NCBI GenBank assembly: GCA_047495785.1
Contig: JBLDXI010000054.1
Location: 620,001 to 684,000, forward strand
Reading direction: 5' to 3'
Source of the DNA: Lepidodermella squamata
Lineage: Eukaryota > Animalia > Gastrotricha
Length of the DNA: 64,000 nucleotides
Below the pieces are notes generated by a model. The model was given only the letters and a program-made list of their open reading frames with translations. It made no database searches and was not told the origin of the DNA. A program made the translations under genes and the position numbers. Below, one piece after another: positions 1,129 to 25,492 of this stretch (positions within the stretch are counted from its first letter, which is position 1; each line of letters opens with the position of its first letter).

Positions 1129-3347
1129 ATTCGACAGCTGGATGACCGCGATTCACCGCCTTCAAATAGCATACTATATTTCGAGGATTGGCAGCTGGAA
1201 ATTCTTCGGAAGGAGATCGCGAAGCCGACCCGACTCCATGCGAAGCGAATTTTAGGAATTGCCGAAGCAGTGAAAACTACCCCAAAACGAGTGCGAATGT
1301 GGTTAAACAATCATCGCGACCAACCTCGAAAGGAGAGAAACATGATCAGATTATCACCTACTCAACTCGAGGCATTGAAGACGTCATTCGCTCGTGATAT
1401 GTCACCGAAACCCACGGGCATTATGAGACTTGCCAATTTGACTGGCTTACTACCGAATAAGGTCCGTAATTGGTTCTACGCTCGTCGTTCTAAGCTCTCA
1501 CTCTGTCCTGAAAGAATCACTCAGAAACATCGACAACTCCTGGAGAAAGTGAGTAGATTTGATAGAGTCATCACGCAACCTATGCTTTTCAGGAATATAC
1601 AGTTAACATATCCCCGAGTATATTTCGGAGAGATGAACTGGCCAAGCTGATTGGATGCTCTAGGGAACAGCTATCCACCTGGTTCTATCGACAACGTCGA
1701 GCAGCTGTCGTTCGAGTGAGAAACAAATTGGATTCCGATGAGGTTTGTTTTAGCTATAGCGTCTTAACCGTCTAAGTCCGGCTGGTGTATGTGTAAGTCG
1801 CTTGGTGTTTTGGAAAGTTTCAAAAAAATGCCAAAAATGTGTGTTACTATTGTAACTTTAAAAAATGCTTGCGTTAACACAAGTCTTGAAATATTTTCAC
1901 CAATTTTTTTCATTTTGACCAAAAATGCCATTTTTACATGCCGAAACACAAGTGATTCGATAGATAGCCGAATTTTTCGCTTGTCGAAACACAAGTGATC
2001 AATGAAGGTGATTGACAAAACTTTGATTTATCGATCAGGGTTAGTTGATAAATCAGTGGCACCTTGATAAACCGGCTGGTATTACAGTCACACACCCTAA
2101 CTACGACCTATTAGCCCATGAAAATCTATATCGAAGCGGCGGCAATCGAATTTATCGGAATTGGGCCGACAAAATCACTTGATAACTTCTTGTCAAGTGA
2201 TAAATGGCTGTCACTAGAGTGCGTAAGCACCAGATGTTGCTGACAACATTTTTATAAGCACAGCTGCGCAACTCAATTTAGGGCCTTGAAAACAGTGATT
2301 AAAAGATCGTATGTGTTTTCGCATGTTAATTGGTTTCCAAAACACGTTCGTGTGTTCGAATGGCAATCAGAGCGACAAAAAATTGCCCCTCATCATGTGT
2401 GCACACATAATGGCACATGTGTTTCGACGAGTTTAAGAGTCGAGGGACATTTACCTAATTACTGTGTTGCGTAATCGCACGTTGCGGACGCGCCCGCCTG
2501 GGTGCTGCAAGCTCAGGTAAGGGGCTCAACCGTGGTATAAAAATTTTATGCCGAAAATTAATAAGCAATCCACACCTACGCCGAGAAGTTGCAATTGACG
2601 AAAACCCATAGTCGGACTTAGAGGGTTAACCGATATACCGATGAGAGCACGGGTTCCAGGAACAGACTTTTTAAGACACACATTTTGATTAAATAGCACG
2701 AAAATAGCGGATGTTAGACTCGAAAAACCTGAACCTGACTGTCTCCCAATTGCTTGGGAATGGGCGCCATTGAGGGGGGTTCGGTGGCCAGAAATCCTAG
2801 TCAATGAACAAACTGAAAAGAGGGCTGCGTTAGCCCATTTGCTTGGTAAAACGACTTGAATAGAGAGGTTATTGTACATTCGTAATAATTTTCTTCCAGG
2901 CTGAAAGGTTGCGAAACAATCCTCTCGCAGGGTCCGAAAAAGGCTCAAGGTTTCAACCGTGGCAGATCGACATCTTGAGAAAAGAAGCTATGAAACCGGA
3001 ACGGCTTTATGCAAAACGCTTGCTTGGTATCGCTGAAGCCGTGAAATCGTCGCCAACTCGAGTCAGAAGTTGGATCGCAGTGCACCGACCATCTTATTTT
3101 CAGAGAATTGCTGAGAAAAAAGCGGAGCAAGAGAGGATGGGCAAACGGCCGATTGCTGCATTGGAAGAGACCTTCTATGAAAACACTCACCCAACAGACG
3201 ATGAATTTCAAGGAATTGCCATGAAGGTTGGACCTCGACCCGAAAAGAGTGAAGCATTGGTTCGCCAAACATCGAACTTTGAGAAAAAAATGGCGGATGA
3301 TACTGCAATCGACTCTACCTATCCCGGCCCAGAATGATTATGAATGA
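1129..3347 (+). pseudogene. Octo-homeobox gene copy 1 (exons 3-5 only; 5' exons presumably upstream of the window), with a 1-bp insertion in the last homeobox
   Basis: Exons 1129-1548, 1593-1742 and 2900-3347, GT-AG, phase 0, colinear with copy 2. An extra G near 3227-3231 (aaggttggacctc vs aggttagacctc / aagatggacctc in paralogues) shifts HD8. Sequence at ~160-235 matches intron 2 of copy 3 (~8130-8205). Confidence 0.8.
1768..2625. mobile_element. piggyBac-type non-autonomous element in intron 4 of homeobox copy 1
   Basis: TTAA at 1764-1767 and 2626-2629. TIRs ccgtctaagtccggct / agtcggacttagaggg. Excision restores gtcttaaccgatat, matching the empty site in paralogous introns (ctcttaccgatat ~5891, gtctttaccgatac ~9282). 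Confidence 0.8.
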
Positions 3348-3454
3348 ATCGATGTCAGAATGAATATTAATCATCAATCTGGTTCCTTATAACATGATTC
3401 TACGCGCTGTTTCAATCAGATGATATTTGCAATGTTATGGATTATACAATTTCT

Positions 3455-3850
3455 TTAGATTTCAATATCGTAATCCGTAATTTCCTTGTTGAAATGCCAA
3501 ACGAGAAACACAAAACACCCAAAAAGAGTCTTCGAAACTTGGCAAGTTATGTGCAACCAATTACAAAAGCGTCGCAGCTTTCTAAAGTGAACAGCCACGC
3601 GAACGCGGAATGCTGGCGGCAACAGCCGAAGCAGTGAACTCTACCCCCCAAATGGGTCAACATTTAATTGAGAGGTAAACTCAGACAAGTCAAATGGCGC
3701 GCGAGGGATATTGATACGTTCACAGGGCATCAATGCGAAGTGCTAGACGGAGCGTAATGACCGGCCGAAGGTTGATGATATTGAAATACAGACTGGCGAA
3801 ATCGGCTGCGATGACGGCAAAACGTTCAGCGATGGTTCAATACTCAACCA
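3455..3850 (+). pseudogene. Degenerate remnant of a copy-5-type homeobox gene
   Basis: cttcgaaacttggcaagttatgtgcaa resembles copy 5 exon 1 (cttcgaaacttggcaactcaaagttatgtgcaa), and the upstream context is similar too. Downstream fragments FTGHQCEVL...GEIGCDD..VQRWFN resemble the terminal homeodomain. Multiple indels and stops. Confidence 0.6.
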
Positions 3851-4209
3851 TTCTTTCTTCATTCCAGCAGTAACGATTCTTTTGAGGACAATTTGGAAAT
3901 GTTGATTATCTTCGAGCAGTTTCAAGTTTGACCTTCGCATATTTGTGATCATTTTTCCCAATGCTGCATTGAAGCTCTTTAATGGCAGAAACAGATTAAT
4001 GTCGTCTGGTGGGCAACAAGACGACTTAGAGTAGAAAATAACTGGCGCGAAAATGATCAGGCACGCGATTGACCAAAATGCTAAAAGTTAGTTTTGCGCC
4101 ATTTCTATTATAGGCAAGTCACCGCCCACCCCCTTCCCCCGCGATATAGCCTCTTCCTAAGGTCAATTTAATTTGTTCCTCATAGGTTTTATACTTTAAT
4201 CTCAAAATA

Positions 4210-7042
4210 ATGAGGAAAGATTTCGAAACACATCAGGTCGAGATTTTGTGCGAATATCTAAAGAAGTGGCAGAACCTAAAATTTGGAGGCTCAAAGAACG
4301 GTCCTTCGGCCAGATCGATTGCTAGATCAGCAGCTGCGAGAATCGGCGAAACACCATCTCGCGTCTACGCATGGATTCGACAACGCAGTAATGCTGATGT
4401 CGCGGAACTCAAATCGACGCCACAGAGATACCTTTCAACAGCGCAATACGAAATTTTGAACTGTTCTTATCTGGAGAATGCCTATCCTAAAGCTGAGGAG
4501 GTCGACCGATTATCGCGGGAAATCGGAATCCCAGCATATCGAGTGAGAAACTGGATGTTCTATCGCCGTCAGAAAGATAATTCCACAACACCGAGGTTCA
4601 AGTTATCTGAGGAACATATTGCGCTACTCAACAAGGTACATATTCCTGAAATAATTAATGTCCTTAGGCTATTGGTAAAATTAAATCCAAGGAATTCAAG
4701 GCGAATATCTCTCCAACTCCTGAACGGATTTCGCAGCTCGCTGAATTGATTGGCTGTCCAAGGTCTTACTTAGTTGGTTGGTTCAAGCGAAGACGCTCAG
4801 CGGAGGGAGTTCAACTGGTGAGAGATGCAGCTCTCCAGGAAAAAGTAATTTTTTCAGTCTACTGTCTTAGGCCAGATTTACGGAGTCCAACTACGTTTTT
4901 CTGTCATGGTCGATATGATAGATGATAGCATCTAGCATCAACGGCGCTTGGCAGCACGCGATTTCTTCAATTGATTAATATTTATGATAAAAAATCGCAC
5001 CCGACGATCCCCACTACCGCGACCGAGCCGGCAACAAGTAGTTGGGTTTTGACACTGCACATCGAGACTAAGATGACTTACAGTCTTGAATGCGTCATTG
5101 ATTTTAGTTCCGCATTTGAATATGTAGTACACATTTTTGCATTAAGTAATTACAAGGGGTTTTTCAAGGGGTAATATTCTACGTTTGACAATGAGTAAGT
5201 AATAAGGATCATTGGAAAAGTTGAGATCATGTTTTGCTCAAGATTCGACAACTGGATGACCGCGATTCACCTCCTTCGAATAGTAAACTATATTTTGAAA
5301 ATTGGCAGCTGGAAATTCTTCGAAAGGAGTTGGCTAAGCCGATGCAACTCGATGCGAAACGAATTTTAGGAATAGCCGAAACAGTGAAAACTACCCCAAA
5401 ACGGGTAAGAGGATGGTTAAACAATCATCGCTATAATCCTGGGAAGGAGAGAGACATGATCAGGTTATCTCCCATCCAACTTGAAGCATTGAAGACATCC
5501 TTTGCTCGTGATATGTCACCTAATCCCACGGAAATGAGGAGGCTAGCCGATTTGACTGGTTTACCATGGAAAAAGGTCCGTGAATGGTTCTACTCTCATC
5601 GTGCTAGGATCTCATCCCGTCCCAAAAAAATCAGTCACACTCGAAAACATCGCGAAATCCTGGAGAAAGTGCGTCATTGTCGATTTGATAGATTTGCTTT
5701 AGCGCCTTATGCTTTTCAGGAATATGCATTTAACATATCCCCGAGTCAAGGTCGAAAGGAAGAATTGGCTAAACTGATTGGCTGTCCTAGGCAGCATATA
5801 GCCGCCTGGTTCTATCGGAAACGTCGAGCTGCTGACATTCGCATGAGAGACAACATGGATTCCATGCAGGTTTGTCTTAGAATGAATTTACTCTTACCGA
5901 TATCCAATGCTTCGTCAAACAGAGCCAGGCCTCTTGTTTTTTCAAAGAGCGCTTCCCTGACAATCTGAAAGAATCTGCCAAAATCCCATGGATCCCATTT
6001 TAAGAGCTCGCATAGGACATTTAGGTCAGATTTGACCTATTTTAGGAGAGATTGCATAGGAGATTGAAACCTTAGTAGAGATCTTAGGTCATCTTGGTGA
6101 ACTCTTTTGATCTCTTTTTAACCTTATATAACACCTGGATGCTTCAAATATTGATAATCGTTTCGAAAGATCATGACCGCTCGAAGTCATTTGACGAAAT
6201 GGGGGTCGAAATGACACCCGCACCTACCAGCTCAGGTTGTCTGATAAAGATCTAAAGATTTGAAGATGAACTATCTCAAAGGTAATTTCGTAAATCAAGT
6301 GCGGAGAATTTGAAAATCAATATTAGAAGCTTCCAGGTGTTGCAGTTAGAGATCCAGAGAGTTCAACAATTTGACCTAAGATCCCTCCTAAGGCGCCGGA
6401 GGGGATGAAAGTCGATTTTACTGACCTCTGTTTATTTTTGCTAATGGTTGGTTTTTCCTCGTCGTTCTATTTTCTAAGGCATGGGGAGGACGGGGTGGGC
6501 AGGGTTGCAAATAACCAAATAAAATGGGGGCCTCTTGCGGTATAAACGACTTTCGAAGGGGTCAATGTATTCGTAATCTTCATCCCTAGGTTGAAATGTC
6601 GAGAACCAGTCCTCTCGCTGAATTCGAAAAACGCTCGAGATTTCACCCGTGGCAGATCGATATTTTACAAAAAGAAGCTATGAAACCCGAACGGCTCTAT
6701 GCTAAACGCTTGCTTGGTATCGCTGAAACCGTGAAATCGTCGCCAACACGAGTCAAGGATTGGATCGCGGCTCACCGACCTACTTCTTTGTGGAGGATTA
6801 CTAAGATGAAAGCGATACAGGAGCGAATCGAAGCGGAAAACCGGCCGTTTGCTGCGTTGAAAGAGGCATTCAGGGAAAACCCTCGCCCAACTGACGCTGA
6901 AATTCAGGACATTGCTCTCAGGTTAGACCTCGACCCAAAAAGAGTAAAGCATTGGTTCGCCAAGCATCGAACTGGTGAGAAAAAATGGCGGATGATAATG
7001 CAATCGACACTACCTAACCCGGCCCAGGATGATGCTGAATGA
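4210..7042 (+). CDS. Octo-homeodomain protein, copy 2 (intact, 535 aa, 5 exons)
   Basis: Exons 4210-4635, 4692-4844, 5243-5668, 5720-5869, 6590-7042; all GT-AG, phase 0, continuous ORF. Eight helix-3 Trp motifs: VYAWIRQR, VRNWMFYRR, LVGWFKRRR, VRGWLNNHR, VREWFYSHR, IAAWFYRKR, VKDWIAAHR, VKHWFAKHR. Confidence 0.85.
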
Positions 7043-7382
7043 ACCGATGTCAGGATGAATCGAAATCATCAATGGGACTCAAGTTTGGTCAAATTTGATC
7101 ATCACAATAGTTTACTTCACGTAATCACGTGACATAGTTTGCCTGCTGGGGTGTAATAATTACCGTCAAATCGGGAGTTTGCCGAAACGCTAGCGATCTT
7201 ACATAGTGACAAAAACAATTCGAGCCACTATTTCCTGCAGATTCGACCTAGGCATATCCATATCCTTTTTTCTTAATGCTGCAATGCTGCTCATGAATAA
7301 CAGAAAACAGATGAATGTAGGTTTATCCGTTGATCTATTTTAATTCCAAATAGTTTTTGCGCTAAATCAAAATATCAAATTA

Positions 7383-10300
7383 ATGCCGAAAGTATTCGAA
7401 CGCAATCAGGTCGAGATCTTGTGCGAATACCTTGAGAAGTGGCAGAACCTAAAGCGTGATGGCTCGAAGAAATGCCCGTCGACCAGATCGATTGCCAAAG
7501 TAGCGGCGGACAGAATCGGCGAAACGCCAACCCAAGTCTTCACATGGATTCGAAAATACAAAAACGCTGATATCGCAGAACTCAAATTGAAGCCGCAGAG
7601 ATTGTATTCAACGGCGCAACGCGACATTTTGAACAAGTTTTATTTGATAAACGCTTATCCTACAGTTGAGGAGATCGAACGATTATCGCGGGAAGTTGGA
7701 CTGCCAGCAATTCGAGTGAGAAACTGGATGCGCGGTCGCCGTAAGAAAGACAATTTCACAAAACGTCGGTTCAAGCTATCCGAGGAACAGATTACGCTAC
7801 TCAACAAGGTATTACACTAGAAATCATTTTAATTATCAGGTAAATCGTTGAAAATATGTCATAGGAATTCGAGGCAAATATCTCTCCAACTTTTAAACGG
7901 AAGTCCCAGCTCGCTGAATTGATTCGTTGTCCAAGGTCTTTCATAGTTGGCTGGTTCGCGCGAAAACGCTCCGCGAAGGGGATTAAACTGAAAGACCCAG
8001 CTTTCCATGAAAAGGTAACTTTGAATTCTTGAAAATATATATGTCATAGCTGGGATACAGTTATTTCATTACCAAATCATTGAATTCTGTATCAAGTTAT
8101 TGCAATTAGTTGCTAGTCCCCAAGATTTTGACGCAGCCTCTAATTATTAGAGTTGATTGAATAAAGTAGCGCAGTAAGATCTCCCGACGTTGTTTTTGGA
8201 TTAGCATATCCTCTTTCTCTTTTGAAAACATTCACTTTGCAGGGTCTTCTTTATGAAGAGCAAGCGATCTATTTTCCATAAGCAACTGTACAATCGAATA
8301 GATTGGAACTGTTATTTATGGAGGTCAACGATTCAGCTCTCAATAAAAACTTCAATTTTTTTTAATTCCCGTTTCAATTTTTCCAAGTTAAAAATTTGAA
8401 ATTACGCAGCCTATAAACAATTCATTTTTTGGAAAAGATTGGCTACCTGTCGTCAGTTAGAGATCGATATGGCCAAATGCTCATGCTGGCACGCGAAAAA
8501 AAAACACGCGACCAACTATGCTAGCTGTTTCTTCGGTCGCTCGCGTGCCTGCATCTGCTTTGATACAAGTGAACACTACGTGATTCACTTTGCAGCATTT
8601 TCGGCATTTAAGTATATTGAAGTTGAGATCATGCTTTGTTGAAGATTCGACAGCTTGATAACCGCGGTTCGCCCCCTTCGAAAAGCAAGCTATACTTCGA
8701 AGAATGGCAGCTCGAAATTCTTCGAAAGGAGATCGCGAAGCCGACCCTACTCCATGCGAAGCGAATTTTAGAAATTGCCGAAGCAGTGAAGACTACCCCA
8801 AAACGGGTGAGAACGTGGTTCAACAATCATCACTATCAACCTGTAAAGGAGAGGAACAAGAACAGGTTATCGCCAACTCAACTCGAGGCATTGAAGTCAT
8901 CATTCGCCCGAGATATGTCACCGAAACTCGATGAAATGAGGAGACTTGCCGAGTTGACTGGTTTACCACCGGCAAAAATACGTGATTGGTTCTACTCTCG
9001 TCGTTCTAGGCTCTCACTCTGTCCTGAAAGAATCACTCAGAAACATCGCCAACTCCTGGAGAAAGTGAGTCATTGTAGATTTGATAGAGTCATCTAGCAC
9101 CTATGCTTTTCAGGAATATTCAGTTAACATATGCCCAAGTAAAGGTCGGAAAGATGCACTGGCTAAGCTGATTGGATGTTCTAGGGAATATCTAGCCACC
9201 TGGTTCTACCGAAAACGTCGAGCTGCTGGCATTCGGATAGTAGAAAGATTGGATTCCAAGGAGGTTTGTTTTAGTCATAGCGTCTTTACCGATACATATG
9301 AGCCGCGACAAGTGAAAACCGTATCTTACGCACTTGTGAGAAATTTTTACCAGAGCGCAAAGAAGGCTTGATGGGTTAATTTTGTCAAAATCAACTTTTC
9401 ATGGTTTTCTTATGCAGTTTTTCATGAGGAATCTGCTGGTGAAATCGGATTTTTTCTGCGATGCATAGTTTTGGTGCTATTAGCTAAAAATGCGAGTGTG
9501 TCTAAATTCTAAATTCAAATATTTATTGTTCATTGATATGGGAGATTCATTGTCAAAAACATGAAATTGACGAATTTTTCGTAATTTTGCTGCTAAAATT
9601 GGGGTGCGCGTAAAACTTTTTCCCATTGCATTTTTCGAGCGAGAACACCATATTCATTGGCAACAGCAATTGCAATTGGCAATTGGGAAACTGGGAGTAC
9701 GGTACTCCCAGTTCGATCTGCCGAAAGAATGACAACATTCTCAGCGAAATAGGACAGGTTTCTCGAGATTTTGCGGCAAGGCTCATTCTTGGATTGGAGA
9801 TCATTTTCCTGACCATTCTTAACTGATTTAGATTCGTCAGTGGGCTGACCCAGTTTGTTTAAATGTTTCGTTAGAGCATACGCTTTTCTAAAACTGTTAG
9901 AATGATGTTGTGCAGAAGTACGCGAGAATCGAATAATGAGGCGTTATTAGTTGTTAGCCTCTTCCAGATCGAAAATTCACAAATTCACGAACATTTCGCT
10001 CGCAGGAGGCTAAACGCACTATAGATTTAGCTCAGCTGTCATTCCTTACCGGTTTCGAAAAATGCGCCAATTCTCTCATTATAGCGCGCTTACGCGCGAT
10101 CCTTAGGAAACAGCGATATCTATAACTATGGCAAATCAGGGTAAATCAAGACATCTGCGAGCGAGCGCGAAGCGATCGCGAGCGATATTTTTTTGGACTA
10201 TATGCTGAGGGAATGACCGATCTGTTTGTTTTTACCGATATACAGCGCTCCATTTGTGAATGCTGGGTTCCCGAAGGCAGCTTGTTGTTTTGCTATTGTT

Positions 10301-11158
10301 GATTACATCGTAAGAGAAATTATAAAAATGTCGGGCGCAAGCAAATCGTAACAGATCCCCTTTTTAAAAGGTCGAATTGGAAAATTTGGTTGGCGTATCA
10401 AAAAGCTTGCGCAAAATTAATTGTCTGAAGAGTCTCACCCAGACTCACCCAGCGGTAAACTGTGAAGACTTACTCGCTTTTCGTTGTCAGCAATACTTTT
10501 GACATAACAACCGCCACGTGAGCGGCGCCTTCATTGCAGCCAATTGTCAATGGAAGGTCGCGTAGCGTTCCACGTAGGAACCCCGTTCCTAGTTCCAAAA
10601 GGAGAACGCAGCTGGCAGCTGAAATCGGCTATGCGCGACCTTCCATTGACAATTGGCTGCAATGAAGGCGCCGCTCACGTGGCGGTTGTTATGTCAAAAG
10701 TATTGCTGACAACGAAAAGGTTGTGTTCAATTGTAAGCTGTGATTCTCTTTACTGACATTTTTAGATCAAGGAAATGAACGAAAATGGCCTCGCGGACAA
10801 GAGTCGAGCTTTTGAGCCTTGGCAACTTGAAATTCTCCGAGAGGAAAGAGCTAGGCCCTCAAGATTATATTCTCGTCGCCTGTTGGAAATCGCCGAACGA
10901 ATTAAGACGGCACCCTGTCGAATAAGAACGTGGTTCCAACACGAGCGCAAACGCGTAGCAGATTCTACTATGCGAAAGCGCAATGATTTCACAGGGAGTT
11001 CAGATCTGGGCAATAAAAAACCAGTTCCTGAAGTTCCATCATCTTTCGCTGAAATGATTTCAAGATCTAGCAGAGCGAATCGGATGTAGTGACTGGAAGA
11101 CGAGAATTCGGAATTGGGTCAGTCGTAATCGTGATAAAATTCTATCCCTGGAAAGGTG
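7383..11158 (+). CDS. Octo-homeobox gene copy 3 (exons 1-4 intact; terminal exon of a different type, duplicated and damaged in HD8)
   Basis: Exons 7383-7808, 7865-8014, 8645-9064 and 9114-9263 are in frame. Next phase-0 acceptor tttag|ATC AAG GAA ATG at 10766. HD7 is intact (IRTWFQHER); HD8 is broken by a +1 G near 10995 and an in-frame TGA, so the predicted ORF ends at 11089 with 7 homeodomains. Confidence 0.65.
10477..10719. repeat. Hairpin / MITE-like inverted repeat (~85-90 bp near-perfect arms)
   Basis: cttttcgttgtcagcaatacttttgacataacaaccgccacgtgagcggcgccttcattgcagccaattgtcaatggaaggtcgcg has its reverse complement at ~10634-10719. Confidence 0.85.
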
Positions 11159-11642
11159 ATATAAATAAAAATATAAACGAACAATATAACATAATAAATT
11201 CCCTTCTTTCGCACAGTTTATACAAAGTGACAGAGATGGCGCGCGGTTGCGAAACGACATGCGCTTGCCGGCGGCAGTGCGCTGAGGACGCTAGTGGGCG
11301 AGCTAAAGGAATATTTATCGTATGCAGAAGATTACATGTAATGGGCTAATCAGAACAGAAGGAGTGCAGCAGGAAGAAAAAGAAAAGAAAGGAGAAGAGG
11401 AACCAGGATGATACAAGGCAAGACTTACAAGATGTAGAAAGACGGAAGAGACACGGAAAGATCACACACCGGAAAGATCACACGTAAAGCCATCTGAATA
11501 GAGACAGCTACATTGCGCACTTTTTGTGTGCGCGAGAAATCTGCACACCTGACTGGACAATAATTGTCTAACTGAGAATAGCTGACGCTATTTTTGAGCT
11601 TAAATTTTCAGCTCAGTTAGCAAAAATTAGGAATTTTCAGTA

Positions 11643-12232
11643 AACCCCGTTCCTAGTTGCGAAAGGAGAACGCAGCTAGCAGCTGAAATCGGCTATGCGC
11701 GATCTTCCATTGATAAATGGCTGCACCGAAAGCGCTCACGAGGCGGTTGTTATGTCAAAAGTATTGCTGACAACGAAAAGCTTGTAGTCAAATTTATAGC
11801 GCGATTCTCTTCATTGACATTTATAGATCAAGGAAATGAACAAAATTGGCCACGCGGACAAGGGTCGAGCTTTTGAGCCATGGCAACTTGAAATTCTTCG
11901 AGAGGAAAGATCTAGGCCCTCAAAATTACATTCGCGCCGCCTGTTGGAAATCGCTGAACGAATTAAGACGGCGCCCCATCGAATAAGATTATGGTTCAAA
12001 CACGAGCACGAACGCGAACGGGAACGCGAAGCAAATGCTTTGCGAAAGCACGATGATTTCACAGGAGTTCAGACCTCGGCAATAAAAGACGAATGGCTAA
12101 AGTTCTCTCATCTTTCGCCGAACGGATTTCAAAATCTAGCAGAGCGAATCGGATGTACCTGGTAGTGACTGGAAGAAAATTCGGAATTGGGTCCGCCGTA
12201 ATCGCGACGAAATTCCATCGCTGAAAAAGTGA
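11643..12232 (+). pseudogene. Direct duplicate of ~10571-11158, carrying a second copy of the terminal homeobox exon (acceptor at 11826)
   Basis: High nucleotide similarity, including the right half of the hairpin. ORF 11836-12165 has HD7 (IRLWFKHEH); HD8 is interrupted by a small insertion creating TAG at 12163-12165. Confidence 0.75.
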
Positions 12233-12384
12233 CCTTACATACTTGTTTAAATTCCCTGCATGATAACGGAATGAAAAACCTAGTTTTTTAGTGTCTATTT
12301 AGTAAGGTGTCAATTATAACTAAATAATTATAACGACCAACGACTACATATTCGTGTCTTACCATCATTCTTCTGATGAAGTTT

Positions 12385-12540
12385 CAGTAGCCATGGTCCA
12401 GTCAAAGTATCCCCGACTAAAGATCAAAAGAAGAAATTGGCTCAGCTGATTGGATGCCCGAGCTCTCTTATAATTGTATGGTTGAAAAAGAGACTTCAAG
12501 CTGCGGATTTTAAAGATAGACAACATGGATTTCAATGAGG
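12385..12540 (+). pseudogene. Orphan degenerate exon-4-type homeobox fragment
   Basis: Reads VKVSPTKDQKKKLAQLIGCPSSLIIVWLKKRLQAA and ends ...caacatggatttcaatgag|gtaagc like exon 4 of the paralogues; frameshifted. Confidence 0.6.
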
Positions 12541-12817
12541 TAAGCTTCGGATCAATGATAAAACTGGCAATTTCTAAATTCTGCTATTCTCAAGGTTGGA
12601 ATGCTGAGCAATAGCTGTTTCGCGGAGTTCGGAAAGGCTCCAGGTTTGACCAGTTGCAGCCTGAGATGTTGAGAAAATGCGAGTTGAGAGGCCAAGATTC
12701 TTAATAGCGCCACACGAACGGTTGTTTTTTTGCAAAAATGCTCGTCAATCTTCAATGACCCAGGAAAACATGATTATTCCATTATCTGCTTATAGGTTAT
12801 CATAATATCTCAAATCA

Positions 12818-15337
12818 ATGATGAAAGGATTCGGAACACATCAGGTCGAGATCTTAAGCGATAACCTAGAGATGCGGCAGAATAACGGTCCTCCGACCAA
12901 ATCGATTGCTGAATCAGCAGCTGAAAGAATCGGCGAAACACCATCCCGCGTCCACGCCAGGAATCGAAACCACAAAAACGCTGATGACGAGGAACTAAAA
13001 TTGACGACGCGGAGAAACCTGTCAAAGGCGCAGATTTTTATCTGGAAAATGCCTATCCTACTGCTGGGAATATGGTACGATTATCGCGGGAAATCGGAAT
13101 CCCAGCGATTCGAGTGAAAAACTGGATGTGCCATCGCCGTAAGAAAGACAAATTATCCCCAACACCGAGGCTCAAGTTGTCTGAGGAACATAAAGCGCTT
13201 CTTAATAAGGTATTTATTATTTTACTAGAAATAATTCATATACACCTGTGCTAATTGGTAAAATTGAATCCAAGGAATTCGAGGCGAATATCTCTCCACC
13301 TACTGAAAGGATATCCCAGCTTGCTGATTTGATTGGCTGTCCGAGGTCTTCCATAGCTGCTTGGCTCAAGCGTAAGCGCTTGGCCGAGGGAATCACGCTG
13401 AAACACGCAGCTATCCAGGAAAAGGTACATTTTTGCTCGCTATAAAAACATTGAAACGTCAGTGCTTTATATATTCGCACTTGGATGAGTAGTACGGATT
13501 TTCGTCAATTCGTATTTAGAAAACCATTTTTTAAATAATCCTTCAGTTATCTGACAATAACTAAGCTAAGCTAAGTCTATCTAAGCTAAATTTAGAAAAG
13601 CTTGAGACAACGTCTAAGCGTTATCGTTTAAGATTCGACAGCTGGATGAGCGCGATTCACCCCCTTCGAATAGTTTAATATACTTCGAGGACTGGCAGCT
13701 GGAGATTCTTCGAAAGGAGTTCACGAAGCCCATCCGACTTCAAGCGAAACGAATTTTAGAAATAGCCGAAAGAGTGAAAACTACCCCAAAACGGGTAAGA
13801 AGGTGGTTAAACAATCAACGCTATAAACCTGGGAAGGAGAGAGACATGATCCGGTTATCTGCCACCCAACTTGAAGCATTGAAGACATTCATTCGCTCGT
13901 GAGATGTCACCAAAACTCTCGGAAATAAGGAGACTTGCCGATTTGACTGGTTTACCATGGAAAAAGGTCCGTGCTTGGTTCTACTCACGTCGTGCTAGGA
14001 TCTCTCCCCGGTCCAAGAGGATCAGCCCCATTCAGGTACACCGCGATATCCTGGAGAGGGTGAGCCGTAGTACATTTGATAGATTGAGTCAAATGTGGCC
14101 TTTGCTTTTCAGGAATATTCAGTTACCATATGCCCAAGTAAAGGTCGGAAAGATGAACTGGCTAAGCTGATTGGATGCCCCAGGCAGCCTATAACCGATT
14201 GGTTCCGGCGAAAACGTCAAGCTGCCATCCACACGAGAGACAACGTAGATTCCATGGAGGTTTGTCTGTTTGTTTTGACCGATGTACAGCGTCCATTGAT
14301 GAAAGTAGGGTTTCAGAAGCCAGCTTGCTTTTTGCAAGGGGTTGATTTGTTGTTGATTGCTGACTTTTTCCTTGTCACCTCCCAGACGAAAATCAGTAGA
14401 CCGAGAGCTCAGTAGATCGTACGTTGATCCAAAAGGCAAAATATTGGTCCAAAATTGCTGTTTTTCTGACCTATTGTCCCGCCTCAGCCCCTACTATGTT
14501 ACTTGCAAACGTGAATGAAACGAAGCGATTTTAAGCGCGTTTATAGCAGAATTTTGTTTCGCTTGAAACTCGATAACTATAAAGAATTATAAAATGACCG
14601 GGATACAAAGATTGCTCAGTTTTTCAACCGCTACAAGACAGAAGCGGTACTGTCACGGCCCGTCCAATTCCCCTCGCCGCTCTCGTCACGCGAAAAATGA
14701 CCCCCCCCCCCTCGATTCCGCTACGTGAATGGTCCCTTTTTAAAATCTCGAATTGGAAAATGTTGGTAGCGTATCATGAAAGCTTGCATGAAATAAACTT
14801 TCAGAAGAGTAAAAGTTCCAGGCGTGGTAAACTGAACACACTTATTTAGAAGCGTTCTGTTGCATTCGTTAATCGTAATTCTTCTACCAGATTGAATTTT
14901 CAAGAATCAGTCCTCTCGCTGAGAGCGATAAACGCTCTAGGTTTTGCCCGTGGCAGATTGAGATTTTGCGAAAGGAAGCTATGAAACCCGAACGGCTTAA
15001 TGAAAAACGCTTGCATGCTATTGCCGAGGCATTGAATTCGTCGCCTGCACGAGTCAAACACTGGATCGCTGCGCACCGACCAGCTTCGTTGTCTGGGATC
15101 GCTGAACAGAGAGCGAAACAAGAGAGGATGGGGACCCAGCCGTTAGCTGCATTGAAAGAGGCCTTTAAAGAAAACCCTCGCCCAAGAGCCGCTGAAATTC
15201 AGTACATTGCTCACAAGATGGACCTCGACCCGAGAAGAGTGAGGCGCTGGTTCTCTAGACATCGATTACTGAGAAAAAAATGGCGGATGATAAAGCAATC
15301 GAAAATGCCTATCCCGGCTCAGGATGACACTGAATAA
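12818..15337 (+). pseudogene. Octo-homeobox gene copy 4 (two frameshifts)
   Basis: Exons 12818-13209, 13275-13424, 13633-14059, 14113-14259, 14891-15337. Deletion frameshift near 13035. A +1 T near 13888 (aagacattcattcgct vs aagacgtcattcgct) makes exon 3 427 nt versus 426 in copy 2. Confidence 0.8.
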
Positions 15338-15463
15338 ATCCATCTGTCTATATATCAGTTGGATTCTGCTAGTATTTTCTATCTGTAATAACTTGAACAC
15401 AGGGAAAGATTAAAGCATGTGCATTATTCAAGTTATTATAGATATTACAATCGTAATTTTGTT

Positions 15464-17401
15464 ATGGAAATGGATAGCGAAAACCATGCATCAAAACGTC
15501 GAGGCTTCGAAACTTGGCAACTCAAAGTTATGTGCAAACAACTTGAAGAATGGAAAAGCATCTCAGCTCGCAAAAGCGCACAGCCACGCTGCAGCTTGAA
15601 GAAGCTCAGCGAAATGCTGGCGGCGAAAGTAAGCAGACGGAGGTCACGAGTGTATTACTGGCTCCGTAAAAATGTAGATCATTCTGACGTCCTCTCAAAG
15701 CAAAAAATTCGCTTTTCTAACTGGCGACTGGGAGCATTGAACAGCTCTTTCGAGCGGAATATGCACCCCGATGATGAAGAGGTCGAGCGGCTCTCAGCTT
15801 TGCTTGGCTGGACAGCCAACAGAGTTCGCGCATGGTTCAAAACATTTCGCTGGAAATTGAATCCATCTGAAGCTAGGCAGAAGAGAACGCGATACATTTT
15901 CACCAGCGAGCAATTGGAATGTTTGAAAAAGGTATTCTTGTTCATTAACGCCATAAATTACTGGTACTGACTTTTACATCTCAGGAATTTTCAAAAAATC
16001 CTTTGCCGACTCGTGAGCGGAAACATGAGCTAGCAGAAGAAATCAGCTGCCCCAAGTTACAACTAGAACGTTGGTTTCAAACAATGCGATCAATGATCGC
16101 TTCCAATTTAATCAGAAATAATGCTTTTGTCAAAAAAGTCAGTATCCAAAATCCCAAAACTAGGCCTCATGCTTGAATATATTTTGAAGATCAACGAAAG
16201 GAACATCACTGCGACAAAATCGAGAAAGTTCGAACCTTGGCAAATAGAGATTCTCCGGGAGGAACGAGCGAAGCCTACGAAATTGAATGCCAAGCGCCTT
16301 TCGGAGATGGCTGAGCGTGTTCAGACGACGCCGAAACGAATACGGTATTGGTTCCACAATCATAGAAAACCTGAAGGCTGTGAAAATAATGCAGCGATTC
16401 CTGTCGCAACTGTAAAACATCAAAAGATTCGGGAGCAAAAGGTCGTTGTAACTGATAACAGATTCAAGTGGAAGAGATTTCCTGAATTGACCGAGTCTTT
16501 CAATCGCAACAAACATCCGGGAAAAGATGAAATATTGCGACTCTCATTTTCGCTCGACATTCCGAAGGACAGGGTTTGGTCGTGGTTCAGACGCCGCCGG
16601 AGTTTCAAACCATCGAAAAAAATAGAAAGAAGAAAAACAGCATTCACGGAAGAGAAATTGGCGTTGTTGGAGAAGGTTTTTTTTACAACTGCCGTTTGCT
16701 ATTATTTTTGCTGTTTTTTCCTGCAGGAGTTTTCAGTGAACCCTGTTCCGAATCGCGAAAGAAAAAATCAACTTGCTGCAGATATCGGTTGCAAGCCGAC
16801 TAAAGTCAATGACTGGTTTAAACAAAAGAGATCCACGGATGGTTCTGATTATACGAGAAATCAAATATATCTCAAGAAGGTTTCTTTCATTTTGATGGTG
16901 TAAGAATCTAGGATCTAGGACTTTGAAATTCGAAGTAATTGTTGCTATAGTGATAGGAGTGATAGCTTTTTATTCCGAATTTCGAGACTGAAATTTTTAT
17001 TAATTTTCCAGGTTGAAGAAATGAACAAAAGTGGGAGAAGTGCGATTCAAAAAGGTCGTTCTTTCGTGCCTTGGCAGATCGAAATTTTGAAGGCAGAACG
17101 GGCTAAACCGGGCCGAATGTGCGCGCGACGTTTGTTGGACATCGCTGAGCGCTTGAATTCCTCCCCGCAGCGAGTTCTTTGTTGGTATAGGCACAGAAGC
17201 GTGCGTTCGCCGATTAAACAAGCGTTTCGTTTCACTGATGAACAAAGAAGGGTTCTGAAGGAGGAATTTAGCAAAAAGCAGTATTTCTCCAAGCTGGAAG
17301 TTCAATACATTGCTGGGAAGATTGGCTTCGGTGATTGGAAGATTATTCAGAGATGGTTTAAGGCGTCTCGCTATAGAAAACGTCTCTCGGAGAAAAAATG
17401 A
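15464..17401 (+). CDS. Octo-homeodomain protein, copy 5 (divergent paralogue, intact, 549 aa, 5 exons)
   Basis: Exons 15464-15931, 15985-16137, 16190-16675, 16727-16879, 17012-17401; all phase 0. Carries the most canonical-looking homeodomains, e.g. RRKTAFTEEKLALLEK|EFSVNPVPNRERKNQLAADIGCKPTKVNDWFKQKR. Confidence 0.85.
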
Positions 17402-18043: not shown

Positions 18044-19294
18044 ATGGCTGCAAAAACCCTTGTCCTGTTCTTGAGTTTAATCAGCCCAATATTGGCTTTA
18101 CCTTCGCCTCAGTCAGATGATTGGTTGGCTGTAGGGGCGGACTATCAAAGGTCTGGTTTCAAGGCAAAGACACTTGGAGCTGTTCAGAAACTCAAACTAG
18201 CATGGTCTTACCAACTACCAGCCGACGGCTTTCCAAGCCCGGCAAGCACCTTTGTCTATAAATCATATGTAATCCGCCTGACTCTGGAGGGATTTGTCTA
18301 CAGCTTCAAGCCTAAATCAGGCCAATTGTTGGACAAGCTTGAAATCGACCGAAATCTACGCAATTCGACCCCTGCATTCACCCATTCGATCATTGAGGAT
18401 GCAAGCGGCATTCTCTACACCTCGGAGGACACCACCCAAAGCATCTACGCCATTAAAATTTCAGACGATGGGAAATTATTTGTGCAATGGTCTCAGAAGG
18501 ACTTGATATGCGTCGATGATCTCATGGTTAGTGCTGAAATCGGGAAACTTTTCGCCGCTGACTCGACATGCAGGAGACAGCTAACAGCTTTCAATCTATA
18601 CACAGGAAATCTGGACCCAAATTTCGGATCAAAGAGTCAGGATGCTTACAAGTTGAGTCTAGCCGGGCCTCAACGGCTTATCGGATCGAATAGTGACAAC
18701 CCTATCAGTATTATCGAGTACTCAGGCGAGGAAGATGGGTCGTCAATGTGGCTCTACCCTAATCCTGATAATTATCTCTACGAAAATGGACCTGTTATCG
18801 TGAATGACATGAGCTTCGCTATGAATAAATCGATATTACAAGCTTTCAGTATCAATGACCAAACAACGTTTTGGAAAAATAAGGCAAGTTGCGATTTCCC
18901 AGCTGTTTCTACTGATGGAATCAACGTTTACTGGCTTTGTACCTTGAATATGTATGTTTTCGATTTGAAAAGTGGGCAGCTGGTGAAAAAGCTGAGCAGC
19001 CCAACGTCAGAAGCATTTTTCTTTCGACCTGTTGTCCTCCATGACGTTATCGCATTGACTACGAAAAACATGCTCCTGTTGTACGATAAAGCAGCGTCTG
19101 ATTCGAAACCATTGGCTAGCTATCAGGCGGATGATTCATCCATTCAGTCAAATATTGTGTATTATGACGGTATGTTCTACATTGTGACTGTGAAGAACAG
19201 GTTGCTAGCTCTCCAGGCATCATCTGGGTCTATGGTTGAAAACTCCTTTCTTGTGCTATTTTCACTAGCTATCTTCTCTAACTTAATGAAATAA
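18044..19294 (+). CDS. Secreted PQQ/BamB-like beta-propeller protein, probably GPI-anchored (416 aa, intronless)
   Basis: N-terminal signal peptide. DWLAVGADYQRSG...LKLAWSYQL resembles the start of PQQ-type propellers. Repeated YSFKPKSGQL, AFNLYTG, YVFDLKSGQLV blade motifs. C-terminal small residues (ASSGS) followed by a hydrophobic tail. Confidence 0.65.
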   Translation: MAAKTLVLFLSLISPILALPSPQSDDWLAVGADYQRSGFKAKTLGAVQKLKLAWSYQLPADGFPSPASTFVYKSYVIRLTLEGFVYSFKPKSGQLLDKLEIDRNLRNSTPAFTHSIIEDASGILYTSEDTTQSIYAIKISDDGKLFVQWSQKDLICVDDLMVSAEIGKLFAADSTCRRQLTAFNLYTGNLDPNFGSKSQDAYKLSLAGPQRLIGSNSDNPISIIEYSGEEDGSSMWLYPNPDNYLYENGPVIVNDMSFAMNKSILQAFSINDQTTFWKNKASCDFPAVSTDGINVYWLCTLNMYVFDLKSGQLVKKLSSPTSEAFFFRPVVLHDVIALTTKNMLLLYDKAASDSKPLASYQADDSSIQSNIVYYDGMFYIVTVKNRLLALQASSGSMVENSFLVLFSLAIFSNLMK

Positions 19295-19399
19295 AATGCT
19301 GTGATTCTTGGACCATTCCGTTAAGCATATGTTATACGCCTATAAGGGATTTAAGCCTTTAGGGGATGAGCACTATATTTCACCAAAATAATGACCGAG

Positions 19400-19574
19400 C
19401 CGTGAGGGTCACTATGGATCACCACCATATATCAATCGATTGCTGTAATCAAGGGCTATCGATTTGGCACCAATGACCCTAATGGCCGCGTGGACCTCGA
19501 TCGGACACCAATCGATGGCCCTACATTACATCAATCGATTGATATATGGTGGTGATCCATAGTGACCCTCACGG
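19400..19574. mobile_element. Short palindromic MITE-like element
   Basis: ~43 bp perfect inverted ends ccgtgagggtcactatggatcaccaccatatatcaatcgattg, with further imperfect pairing inside. Confidence 0.75.
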
Positions 19575-19958
19575 TTTGGCCGGTACGGCTATTGAAAATA
19601 TCGCTTATCCCGCTAAGCCATATATATTTTCAAGGTGTCCACAGCAGTATCTATCGAATGAGCTATGGCTCGTAGTCAAAGAGCGATGTAGGACAGCCGA
19701 GCTGATTGGAATAAGGAAAATCGACATAAAGGTCTTTGACTGAGTTCACCCGGCGAACCGATTGAACTGGTAGGGACGATCCCCACCATCCCTACCCTGA
19801 GCGACAATTTCAGGCCTTTTAACTCATAAAATCAAAAAAACTAAATATGCAAATTAGCGAGAGTTTGTCTCTGGACAGTATTCTGTTGAAAGTATAGTTT
19901 TTTGCGGAGCTGGGCCAGCGGAACCGCGGTGAGAGTTTCGCTGTGAGAAATGGTTTCT

Positions 19959-24657: not shown

Positions 24658-25492
24658 CACTCATCACCCACGTGAGATTTTTTATCATCGTGATTTTTTT
24701 GTGAATAAAATGATGATTGATGGCTGAGGCTTTGTCTATTTTTTCTGCCGATCGATTTTTCTATTCGGTGATGGTAAATAATTGCCAATCAAGGCGAGAG
24801 ATTAATTAATGGATGTGTTTTCGCACTAAATTTTTTCATTTAAATGCTGCGTGTGGGTATTACGCCAGCTGCACGCCAAAACCAAAGAAGCTAAAATTAT
24901 GAAAATTTGAACATTTCCTATACTCCCTACTTCCTCTTATCCTTACTTTGGGAGATTCCCACTATTTTTGTGCTGAAAAGCTAATCCCTGATTTTAGAGA
25001 ATTTTTGAATTTTAGAAACCTGATAGCGTCTGGATACATTTTTAAAAATATTTGAAAATTTTGCCGGGCAGTGAATTCAATACGGAATGCTTTGTCTAGG
25101 ATTAACTCGGTCATTTTTGCCCGTTCATTCCCCTTTAAAGCAGAACATGCTCAACGGTAAATAGGTATTTTCATGAAAAACAGCGCCGCAATACATTTCA
25201 ATAGCTCATGTTTGACAGCCGTTTACCTTGCGTTTCTCTCAAGAATGCGTAGGCCCGGAAATCGATTAAAAAATTCAGGAACCAGCAATTGCACTGCGCT
25301 GTGGCAAATACTGGAAATGCCGGGGAATAATTTTTATACACCCTATTTAGTTCTCGGTGTCCCCTGGGTGTCTACGTCAAATTTCAGAAAATCACGCGAT
25401 TTGTTGTCTCCCTGACCTGAGTATTTAAGTGGCATTTTCAACGTTGAAATGAACTGTTAAAAATTATTTTGTTGACAATTAGACTAAATGTG

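What the first reader, a model, noticed from the sequence alone, without database searches (positions are those of the whole stretch)
1129..17401. Tandem array of octo-homeobox genes: proteins made almost entirely of 8 homeodomains
Seen: the many short homeobox-like ORFs splice into at least five head-to-tail genes with one shared 5-exon plan. The two intact copies encode 535 and 549 aa with 8 homeodomains, short linkers and no other domain. Known: most homeoproteins have one HD; multi-HD types (DUX 2, ZFHX 4, ZHX ~5, some nematode ceh genes, amphioxus Mux) are rare and often carry other domains or are lineage-specific. Inference: this is a lineage-specific, rapidly evolving multi-homeobox cluster. 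By analogy with DUX-type arrays it might act in germline or early embryo, but the sequence does not show that.
Basis: partly seen in the sequence, partly recalled or inferred. Interest (0 to 1): 0.92.

Follow-up and report, generated by a model that had tools for sequence, protein, structure and literature searches.

The report
Tandem genes encoding eight-homeodomain proteins
An animal genome carries a head-to-tail cluster of fast-evolving genes whose proteins are little more than eight DNA-binding homeodomains in a row; this is an unusual but not unprecedented kind of transcription-factor-like protein, its splicing is inferred and not seen in RNA, and its function is unknown.

Summary
On the + strand, 1129-17401 carries five head-to-tail copies of one 5-exon gene plus exon debris. 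Two copies are intact: G1 (4210-7042, 535 aa) and G4 (15464-17401, 549 aa). They share only 36% identity but have the same four phase-0 introns. G2 has lost its last exon. G3 has frameshifts. G0 has one frameshift and runs off the window start. Each intact protein has eight homeodomains (HDs). Seven are significant against an HD profile built only from other organisms' proteins. HD1 is atypical, with a 9-residue loop insert, and is supported by profile-profile comparison and a fold model. No other domain is present. dN/dS of 0.3-0.5 shows constrained but fast evolution. Asn51 survives only in HD4, and position 47 is the most variable site. No RNA data were reachable, so splicing rests on comparative evidence. 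No orthologue was found (best hit 27% identity). The kind is known, though: C. elegans CEH-100 has 12 HDs, and public data hold unnamed proteins with 8-17 HDs. One metagenome contig carries its own tandem array of intronless 8-HD genes. Unchecked scan notes report further 7-HD arrays in this genome. I rate it a new variant of a known kind, of moderate interest.

The parts
1129..1548 (+). G0 exon Xa (HD4, HD5, start of HD6). The frame is open. The Z exons of this copy lie before the window start.
1593..1742 (+). G0 exon Xb (rest of HD6), open frame
2900..3345 (+). G0 exon Y (HD7, HD8) with a one-base frameshift near 3222 inside HD8
3925..4007 (+). About 75-nt element upstream of G1, conserved with 7240-7322 upstream of G2. 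Candidate promoter or 5' UTR element.
4210..4635 (+). G1 exon 1 (Za): ATG, HD1 (atypical, loop insert), HD2, first 18 codons of HD3
4692..4844 (+). G1 exon 2 (Zb): rest of HD3
5243..5668 (+). G1 exon 3 (Xa): HD4 (the only HD that keeps Asn51), HD5, start of HD6. There is no in-frame ATG before HD4.
5720..5869 (+). G1 exon 4 (Xb): rest of HD6
6590..7042 (+). G1 exon 5 (Y): HD7, HD8, stop codon. The whole gene encodes 535 aa.
7240..7322 (+). Conserved upstream element of G2, the counterpart of 3925-4007
7383..7808 (+). G2 exon Za, open frame
7865..8014 (+). G2 exon Zb, open frame
8645..9064 (+). G2 exon Xa, open frame
9114..9263 (+). G2 exon Xb, open frame with an intact donor. No regular Y exon follows.
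10576..11158 (+). Debris unit W. The Xb-like exon (10576-10722) has an in-frame stop and a perfect 86-nt inverted duplication. The Y-like exon (from 10765) has a frameshift in its second HD. It resembles the G4 subfamily and might serve as the last exon of G2.
11631..12165 (+). Debris unit W', 83% identical to W. The Xb-like exon (11631-11780) has lost its GT donor. The Y-like exon (11827-12165) has a premature stop in its second HD.
12390..12537 (+). Solo Xb-like exon remnant with a frameshift
12818..13209 (+). G3 exon Za, broken by deletions and a frameshift. Trp48 of HD1 is lost.
13275..13424 (+). G3 exon Zb, open frame
13633..14059 (+). G3 exon Xa, with a one-base insertion that shifts the frame in HD5
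14113..14259 (+). G3 exon Xb, open frame
14891..15337 (+). G3 exon Y, open frame with stop codon
15464..15931 (+). G4 exon 1 (Za'): ATG, HD1, HD2, start of HD3
15985..16137 (+). G4 exon 2 (Zb')
16190..16675 (+). G4 exon 3 (Xa')
16727..16879 (+). G4 exon 4 (Xb')
17012..17401 (+). G4 exon 5 (Y') with stop codon. The whole gene encodes 549 aa, and its introns are only 51-132 nt.

Best explanation
This is a birth-and-death tandem family of one gene type. Each gene has five exons joined by four phase-0 introns and encodes a very basic protein (pI about 10) of roughly 540 aa. The protein is made almost wholly of eight tightly packed homeodomains. The eight domains come from an internal triplication of a three-domain cassette (types A-B-C, A-B-C, A-B), in which the C-type domain is always split by a roughly 50-nt intron between HD codons 18 and 19. 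Shown: the exon plan, the eight HD homologues, the intact and broken copies, and purifying but relaxed selection. Inferred: the proteins are nuclear nucleic-acid-binding regulators in which several HDs read a long composite site. Because Asn51 is replaced in seven of eight domains and the base-contacting position 47 varies most between copies, recognition is probably non-canonical and differs from paralogue to paralogue. When and where the genes act is unknown.
For: Gene plan. Exon blocks are 70-85% identical between the four closer copies, while introns and spacers do not align. GT..AG sites sit at homologous positions in every copy that carries the exon, including G4 at 36% protein identity. 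All exon lengths in G1 and G4 are multiples of three. The X exons never have an in-frame ATG before HD4, and G1 has an in-frame stop just upstream of the acceptor. The Z exons share an ATG in a conserved context, and G1 and G2 share an upstream element. The Y exons end in a stop codon in all copies. G4's introns are 51-132 nt, which leaves no room for separate promoters. HD3 and HD6 become full-length, significant homeodomains (33-50 bits) only after splicing.

Eight HDs. Evidence comes from Pfam, a foreign-protein HD profile, hhalign for HD1 and HD7, and an AlphaFold2 model of exon 1 with pLDDT 85 and two three-helix bundles, in which HD2 matches solved homeodomains at Z about 10. The cassette homology is HD1~4~7, HD2~5~8 and HD3~6.

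Selection and binding. dN/dS is 0.30-0.56 over whole pairs among G0-G3. Core residues 15, 16, 48 and 53 are nearly fixed, and position 47 differs in 79% of comparisons. All HDs carry a net positive charge, and the proteins have pI 10.1-10.5.
Against: No transcript evidence could be obtained. The only run that holds the locus behaves like genomic DNA. HD1 is only marginal by HMM scoring. Asn51, the residue that normally contacts adenine (textbook knowledge), is kept only in HD4, so classic TAAT-type binding is doubtful for most domains. ZHX homeodomains show that HDs in multi-HD proteins can serve protein-protein contacts instead (PMC2893186). The excess variability at specificity positions 47/50/51/54 is not significant (0.49 against 0.33, permutation fraction 0.07). 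The Y exons of G1 and G4 have an in-frame ATG near their start. All exons are symmetric, so shorter isoforms with fewer HDs are possible.
Confidence: 0.62

Rival explanations
1. The Z, X and Y blocks are separate small genes, or alternative transcripts, encoding 2-3 homeodomains each, not one 8-HD protein.
For: No RNA confirms the junctions. The Y exons of G1, G4, W and W' carry an in-frame ATG close to their 5' end. All exons are in phase, so skipping any of them keeps the frame.
Against: The X exons have no start codon in any of five copies, and G1 has an upstream in-frame stop. The Y-exon ATG is absent in G0 and G3. Acceptor and donor signals are conserved at every block edge, even in G4. 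G4's blocks are only 52 and 132 nt apart. The Z and X blocks each end in an open frame at a donor site, not at a stop codon.
Confidence: 0.15
2. The spliced 8-HD proteins are real but do not read DNA. Their degenerate homeodomains act as protein-protein or RNA-binding modules, that is, a scaffold or co-repressor like some ZHX domains.
For: Asn51 is replaced in 7 of 8 domains. HD1 has a 9-residue loop insert and Ser53 in G1. ZHX2 HD2 has a disrupted DNA site and dimerises (PMC2893186).
Against: Trp48, residue 49 (Phe, or Leu/Ile/Met) and Arg53 are kept in seven of eight domains. Every domain is net positive and the whole protein has pI above 10. HD4 keeps Asn51 and Arg53 in G0, G1, G3 and G4; G2 keeps Asn51 but has His53.
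Confidence: 0.2
3. The array is decaying, non-functional duplicated DNA, and the open frames are leftovers.
For: Three of five copies are damaged and exon debris lies between G2 and G3.
Against: G1 and G4 keep 535-549 codons open with all eight splice sites, although synonymous sites between them are saturated and they share only 36% identity. dN/dS is well below 1. Fold-critical residues are conserved.
Confidence: 0.03

Closest known systems
C. elegans CEH-100 / CEH-99 and other divergent multi-HD ceh genes (Hench et al. 2015, PMC4448998; Buerglin and Affolter 2016, PMC4901127)
   Same: These are orphan, fast-evolving homeobox genes without orthologues. Their proteins are made of many tightly packed, divergent HDs (CEH-100 has 12). 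They lie in duplication-rich regions. No other domain type is reported for them in the passages read.
   Different: No orthology was detected. Nematode multi-HD proteins hit at about 27% identity or less and without register. The family here has a fixed 8-HD plan built from a tripled A-B-C cassette, sits in head-to-tail arrays, and has a characteristic intron in the C-type HD.
Unnamed 8-HD genes on ENA metagenome contig ERZ26273096:ctg154794 (locus L001; P0010, with its colinear relative P0006 from another contig)
   Same: It is a head-to-tail array of four genes. Three are intact at 506-517 aa with 8 HDs each and no other domain, and one is broken. The size and architecture are almost the same as G1 and G4.
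   Different: Those genes have no introns, and the contig has 37% GC. HD-by-HD comparison shows no positional correspondence with G1 or G4, by single sequences or by profiles. The origin is therefore independent or very ancient. The organism is unknown.
DUX family (double homeobox, tandem arrays in mammals)
   Same: The genes are tandemly repeated and fast evolving. DUX4 HD1 is the best solved-structure sequence match to HD5 (E 1e-9).
   Different: DUX proteins have two PRD-type HDs with Asn51 and a C-terminal activation region. The proteins here have eight HDs, seven of them without Asn51.
ZHX / HOMEZ and ZFHX (ZF class)
   Same: These proteins have several (3-5) divergent HDs. ZHX2, ZHX3 and ZFHX3 HDs are among the nearest solved sequences.
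   Different: Those proteins carry C2H2 zinc fingers and long linkers. No zinc finger or other domain is present here.
Amphioxus Muxa / Muxb (orphan multi-homeobox genes, listed in PMC6118893)
   Same: They are orphan, lineage-specific multi-homeobox genes.

Membership tests
Homeodomain superfamily (PF00046) | Sequence match to the homeodomain profile above the curated cut-off | tested here: met
   In G1, HD2, HD4, HD5 and HD8 score 25-44 bits against a cut-off of 22.9. HD3, HD6 and HD7 score 16-17.5 bits when scanned as unspliced pieces. On the spliced proteins, 7 of 8 domains are significant against a profile built from foreign proteins.
Homeodomain superfamily (PF00046) | Three-helix fold with Trp48, Phe49 and Arg53 | tested here: met
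   The AlphaFold2 model of exon 1 (pLDDT 85) has two three-helix bundles, and HD2 superposes on solved HDs at Z about 10 and rmsd 0.4-2 A. All eight domains of G1 have Trp48, and seven have Arg53.
Homeodomain superfamily (PF00046) | Asn51 in the recognition helix | tested here: not met
   Only HD4 keeps Asn51. The other domains have Gln, Tyr, Arg, Ser, Arg, Ala and Lys at that position in G1. This bears on canonical DNA reading, not on fold membership.
DUX (double homeobox) | Exactly two PRD-like homeodomains | tested here: not met
   Eight domains are present.
ZHX/HOMEZ and ZFHX (ZF class) | C2H2 zinc fingers together with the homeodomains | tested here: not met
   Pfam scans of all exons returned no zinc-finger family.
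HOCHOB double homeodomain (PF17943) | Match to the HOCHOB profile above its cut-off | tested here: not met
   The only hit is 15 bits against a cut-off of 26.3, E 0.042, on G4 exon 3.
CEH-100/CEH-99 type nematode multi-HD genes | Orthology, or domain-by-domain correspondence | tested here: inconclusive
   Nematode multi-HD proteins appear among the hits only at 24-27% identity (P0007, P0009, P0025). CEH-100 itself was not fetched or aligned.
Amphioxus Mux | Sequence relationship to Muxa or Muxb | not tested
No named Mux protein appeared among the cluster names looked up.

The most novel reading that the evidence does not exclude
This animal may have built a large, rapidly diversifying family of 'polydactyl' homeodomain proteins. 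That would mean dozens of 7-8-HD genes in several tandem arrays that read long DNA targets module by module, with specificity residues (positions 47, 50, 54) turning over between copies. It would be an independent, homeodomain-based counterpart of KRAB zinc-finger arrays, perhaps aimed at mobile elements or at lineage-specific early development.
Probability: 0.12. Interest if true: 0.85.

Novelty: new variant of a known kind. Interest (0 to 1): 0.55.

Why it matters
Multi-homeobox proteins are treated as rare oddities (PMC6118893), and CEH-100 with 12 HDs is cited as the extreme case (PMC4901127). Here a fixed eight-domain plan is kept across deep paralogue divergence, has expanded in tandem, and has lost the canonical Asn51 in most domains. 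If these proteins bind DNA, they offer a natural test of how chains of homeodomains read long sites and how specificity evolves in such chains. A second 8-HD tandem array was found in an unknown eukaryote, along with database proteins carrying up to 17 HDs. Poly-homeodomain proteins may therefore be a recurrent, overlooked class and not one-off curiosities.

Tried and rejected
1. RNA evidence. The single run search, asked with kind 'any', returned only one holder, of unknown type. Its contigs cover introns and spacers evenly, so it behaves like genomic DNA.

2. The joint 4817->5226 (GT..AG, one contig, 'between: not known') was considered as a splice. I rejected it because it would shift the frame into an early stop, it differs from the conserved junction 4844^5243, and it comes from a DNA-like run. 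It is probably a paralogue or a chimeric contig.

3. Orthology with the metagenome 8-HD family. No diagonal appears in the 8x8 domain matrices, by pairwise score or by profile.

4. Identifying the organism. A 793-aa receptor gave one 33% hit from a metagenome. A Rho GTPase gave hits of 43% or less, scattered over eukaryotes. Rfam found nothing in the window, and scan notes gave no taxon. Cys-loop receptor ORFs in the window point to an animal (reading the sequence).

5. The ESM Atlas returned only generic homeodomain clusters at scores of 0.81 or lower.

6. A test for excess change at specificity positions was suggestive but not significant.
Full report
**What is there.** All homeobox-like reading frames in the window lie on the + strand between about 1120 and 17400. 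Self-comparison of the DNA shows three kinds of conserved block:
- Z: 4179-4853, 7366-8022, 12789-13434
- X: 1123-1770, 5218-5880, 8620-9291, 13626-14267
- Y: 2845-3378, 6539-7073, 14870-15343

They are repeated in the order Z-X-Y at 70-85% identity, while the DNA between blocks does not align. A further, much more diverged Z-X-Y set lies at 15464-17401. Pfam finds the Homeodomain family in nearly every block.

**Gene models.** Multiple alignment of the blocks shows GT..AG signals at homologous positions in every copy that carries the exon, including the diverged one.
- Splicing G1 at 4210-4635, 4692-4844, 5243-5668, 5720-5869 and 6590-7042 gives an open frame of 535 aa.
- Splicing G4 at 15464-15931, 15985-16137, 16190-16675, 16727-16879 and 17012-17401 gives 549 aa.

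All four introns are phase 0, and every exon length in the two intact genes is a multiple of three. G1 and G4 are only 36% identical yet share the whole plan.

Several points argue that Z-X-Y is one gene and not three:
- The X exons have no in-frame start codon in any of five copies. In G1 an in-frame stop lies just before the acceptor.
- The Z exons start with an ATG in a conserved context (TCAAAnnAATG). G1 and G2 also share a roughly 75-nt upstream element.
- The Y exons end in a stop codon in all copies.
- In G4 the blocks are only 52 and 132 nt apart.
- The third and sixth homeodomains are each split by a roughly 50-nt intron between HD codons 18 and 19. They become complete, significant domains only after splicing.

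**State of the copies.**
- G1 and G4 are intact.
- G2 (7383-9263) has four open exons encoding six HDs, but no regular last exon. Downstream lie two 83%-identical debris units, each a broken Xb-like plus Y-like exon pair of the G4 subfamily (10576-11158 and 11631-12165), and a solo Xb-like remnant (12390-12537). The first Y-like exon has a good acceptor in phase and could end a 7-HD version of G2, but that is a guess.
- G3 (12818-15337) has deletions and a frameshift in exon 1, has lost Trp48 of HD1, and has a one-base insertion in exon 3.
- G0 (1129-3345) has open X exons and a one-base frameshift in exon Y. Its Z exons lie before the window start.

'At least five head-to-tail genes, two intact' is therefore correct.

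**Are there eight homeodomains?**
- Pfam, on domain-sized pieces of G1, passes its own cut-off for HD2, HD4, HD5 and HD8. It gives sub-threshold hits for HD3, HD6 (scanned as halves) and HD7, and nothing for HD1.
- I built a homeodomain profile from 756 domain instances in the 160 foreign proteins returned by the searches, so it is independent of this window. On the spliced proteins it finds eight envelopes in G1, seven of them significant (domain E 2e-5 to 1e-18) and HD1 marginal. In G4 it finds seven significant domains, and HD1 is split into two weak pieces by a loop insert.
- Profile-profile comparison matches HD1 to that profile at 95% probability (E 2e-8), with a 9-residue insert between helices 1 and 2. 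HD7 matches at 97.5%.
- An AlphaFold2 model of exon 1, made from an alignment of the ten cassette copies, has mean pLDDT 85 and two three-helix bundles. HD2 superposes on solved homeodomains at Z about 10.
- Apart from Homeodomain and Homeobox_KN, only single marginal helix-turn-helix hits (HTH_3, MerR_1) pass a curated cut-off, and they lie on the same HD stretches.
- The roughly 50-residue HD cores alone cover 75% of each protein.

**Internal structure.** The Z, X and Y cassettes align with each other: HD1~HD4~HD7, HD2~HD5~HD8 and HD3~HD6. The protein is thus a tripled A-B-C cassette whose last copy lacks C. This agrees with another scan note on this stretch.

**Selection and likely chemistry.**
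- Among the four closer copies, dN/dS is 0.30-0.56 over whole pairs. That is constrained but fast evolution. Between G1 and G4, synonymous sites are saturated.
- Core positions 15, 16, 48 and 53 are almost fixed.
- Position 47, which in solved homeodomain-DNA complexes faces the major groove (textbook knowledge), differs in 79% of paralogue comparisons and is the most variable site.
- The set 47/50/51/54 is more variable than the rest of helix 3 (0.49 against 0.33), but not significantly so (permutation fraction 0.07).
- Asn51 is kept only in HD4.
- Every domain is net positive, and the proteins have pI 10.1 and 10.5.

I infer a nucleic-acid-binding, probably DNA-binding, regulator with non-canonical recognition that differs between paralogues. 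A scaffold role is the main rival, since some ZHX homeodomains dimerise with a disrupted DNA site (PMC2893186).

**What could not be shown.** The only public run holding the locus is of unknown type, and its contigs cover introns and spacers, as genomic DNA would. One contig joint (4817->5226, GT..AG) is not the predicted junction and would break the frame. I treat it as a paralogue or chimera and leave it unexplained.

**Comparison with what is known.**
- An exhaustive HMMER search of 1.84 billion representative proteins with exons 3-4 of G1 found no orthologue. The best hit is 27% identical, and this genome's own proteins are not in the library.
- The top hits are nonetheless nearly all multi-HD proteins. 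By my profile, 22 of the 160 have 8-17 HDs. They include stick-insect (Timema, 9 HDs), Caenorhabditis nigoni (8-10) and Heterodera (8) proteins, and unnamed metagenome proteins with 13, 15 and 17 HDs.
- One metagenome contig (L001) carries its own head-to-tail array of four intronless genes. Three are intact with 8 HDs in 506-517 aa, about 51% identical to each other. Domain-by-domain matrices show no positional correspondence with G1 or G4, so that family is independent or too old to tell.
- The literature lists multi-homeobox genes as rare: Hdx, Compass, Zfhx, Zhx/Homez, Mux, Dux (PMC6118893). It names C. elegans CEH-100, with 12 tightly packed HDs and no orthologues, as the extreme (PMC4448998, PMC4901127). 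About 25 fast-evolving unclassified nematode homeobox genes, many of them multi-HD, are also noted (PMC6956190).
- The nearest solved sequences to HD5 are DUX4, ZHX and ZFHX domains.

**Verdict.** The interpretation as a lineage-specific, fast-evolving multi-homeobox cluster is right, but its rarity was overstated. It is a new variant of a known kind, the orphan poly-homeodomain genes of CEH-100 type. It is distinguished by a fixed tripled-cassette 8-HD plan, tandem expansion and near-complete loss of Asn51. Unchecked scan notes report further arrays of 7-HD genes elsewhere in this genome. If they hold, the family is large, and a KRAB-zinc-finger-like role becomes worth testing. The organism is coded and could not be identified. 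Cys-loop receptor ORFs in the window indicate an animal.

Noticed in passing
L001:10001-18479 (ENA ERZ26273096:ctg154794): A metagenome contig from an unknown eukaryote (GC 37%) carries its own head-to-tail array of four intronless genes. Three are intact with 8 homeodomains each (506-517 aa, about 51% identical) and one is broken into three frames. It shows no position-wise orthology to the window's genes.
   Followed up: yes
P0001 (1666 aa, ENA), P0150 (1433 aa, Logan), P0008 (1300 aa, JGI): These unnamed metagenome proteins have 17, 15 and 13 homeodomains by my profile. That is more than the 12 of CEH-100, which the literature cites as the record. P0008 also ends in C2H2-like motifs.
   Followed up: partly
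window 10477-10719: A perfect inverted duplication (86-nt arms, 100% complementary, 71 nt apart) overwrites the 5' part of the Xb-like exon of debris unit W. A partial inverted copy lies at 11698-11781. It is either a recent rearrangement or an assembly artefact.
   Followed up: partly
window 6070-6393 (intron 4 of G1): This is a foldback or MITE-like element, with inverted arms 6070-6115/6348-6393 and 6130-6155/6316-6341. The laid contigs show a depth peak (1129 in bin 6200-6399) and opposite-strand joints here, so it is repeated in the genome.
   Followed up: partly
window 4171-4174, 7350-7353, 12792-12795, 15438-15441: A conserved ATAG sits 25-35 nt upstream of the start codon of each Z exon. 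The spacers to the previous gene are very short (340 nt between G1 and G2, 126 nt between G3 and G4). It could be an acceptor for a 5'-UTR intron or for trans-splicing of a polycistronic transcript. This was not testable here.
   Followed up: no
window 4817 -> 5226: One contig of run X1 joins these two places (GT..AG ends, 'between: not known'). It is not the conserved splice junction and would shift the frame. It is probably a paralogue or a chimeric contig, and it remains unexplained.
   Followed up: partly
window 19395-19579: A 70-nt inverted repeat (91% complementary, 45-nt spacer) lies just downstream of the single-exon secreted-protein ORF 18044-19294.
   Followed up: no
window 18044-19294, 25469-26647, 42567-44948: These long single-exon ORFs (a 416-aa signal-peptide protein, a Cys-loop channel, a 793-aa class-C-like receptor) have almost no close relatives in the protein collection (best hit 33% identity). 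The genome seems to come from a poorly sampled animal lineage.
   Followed up: partly
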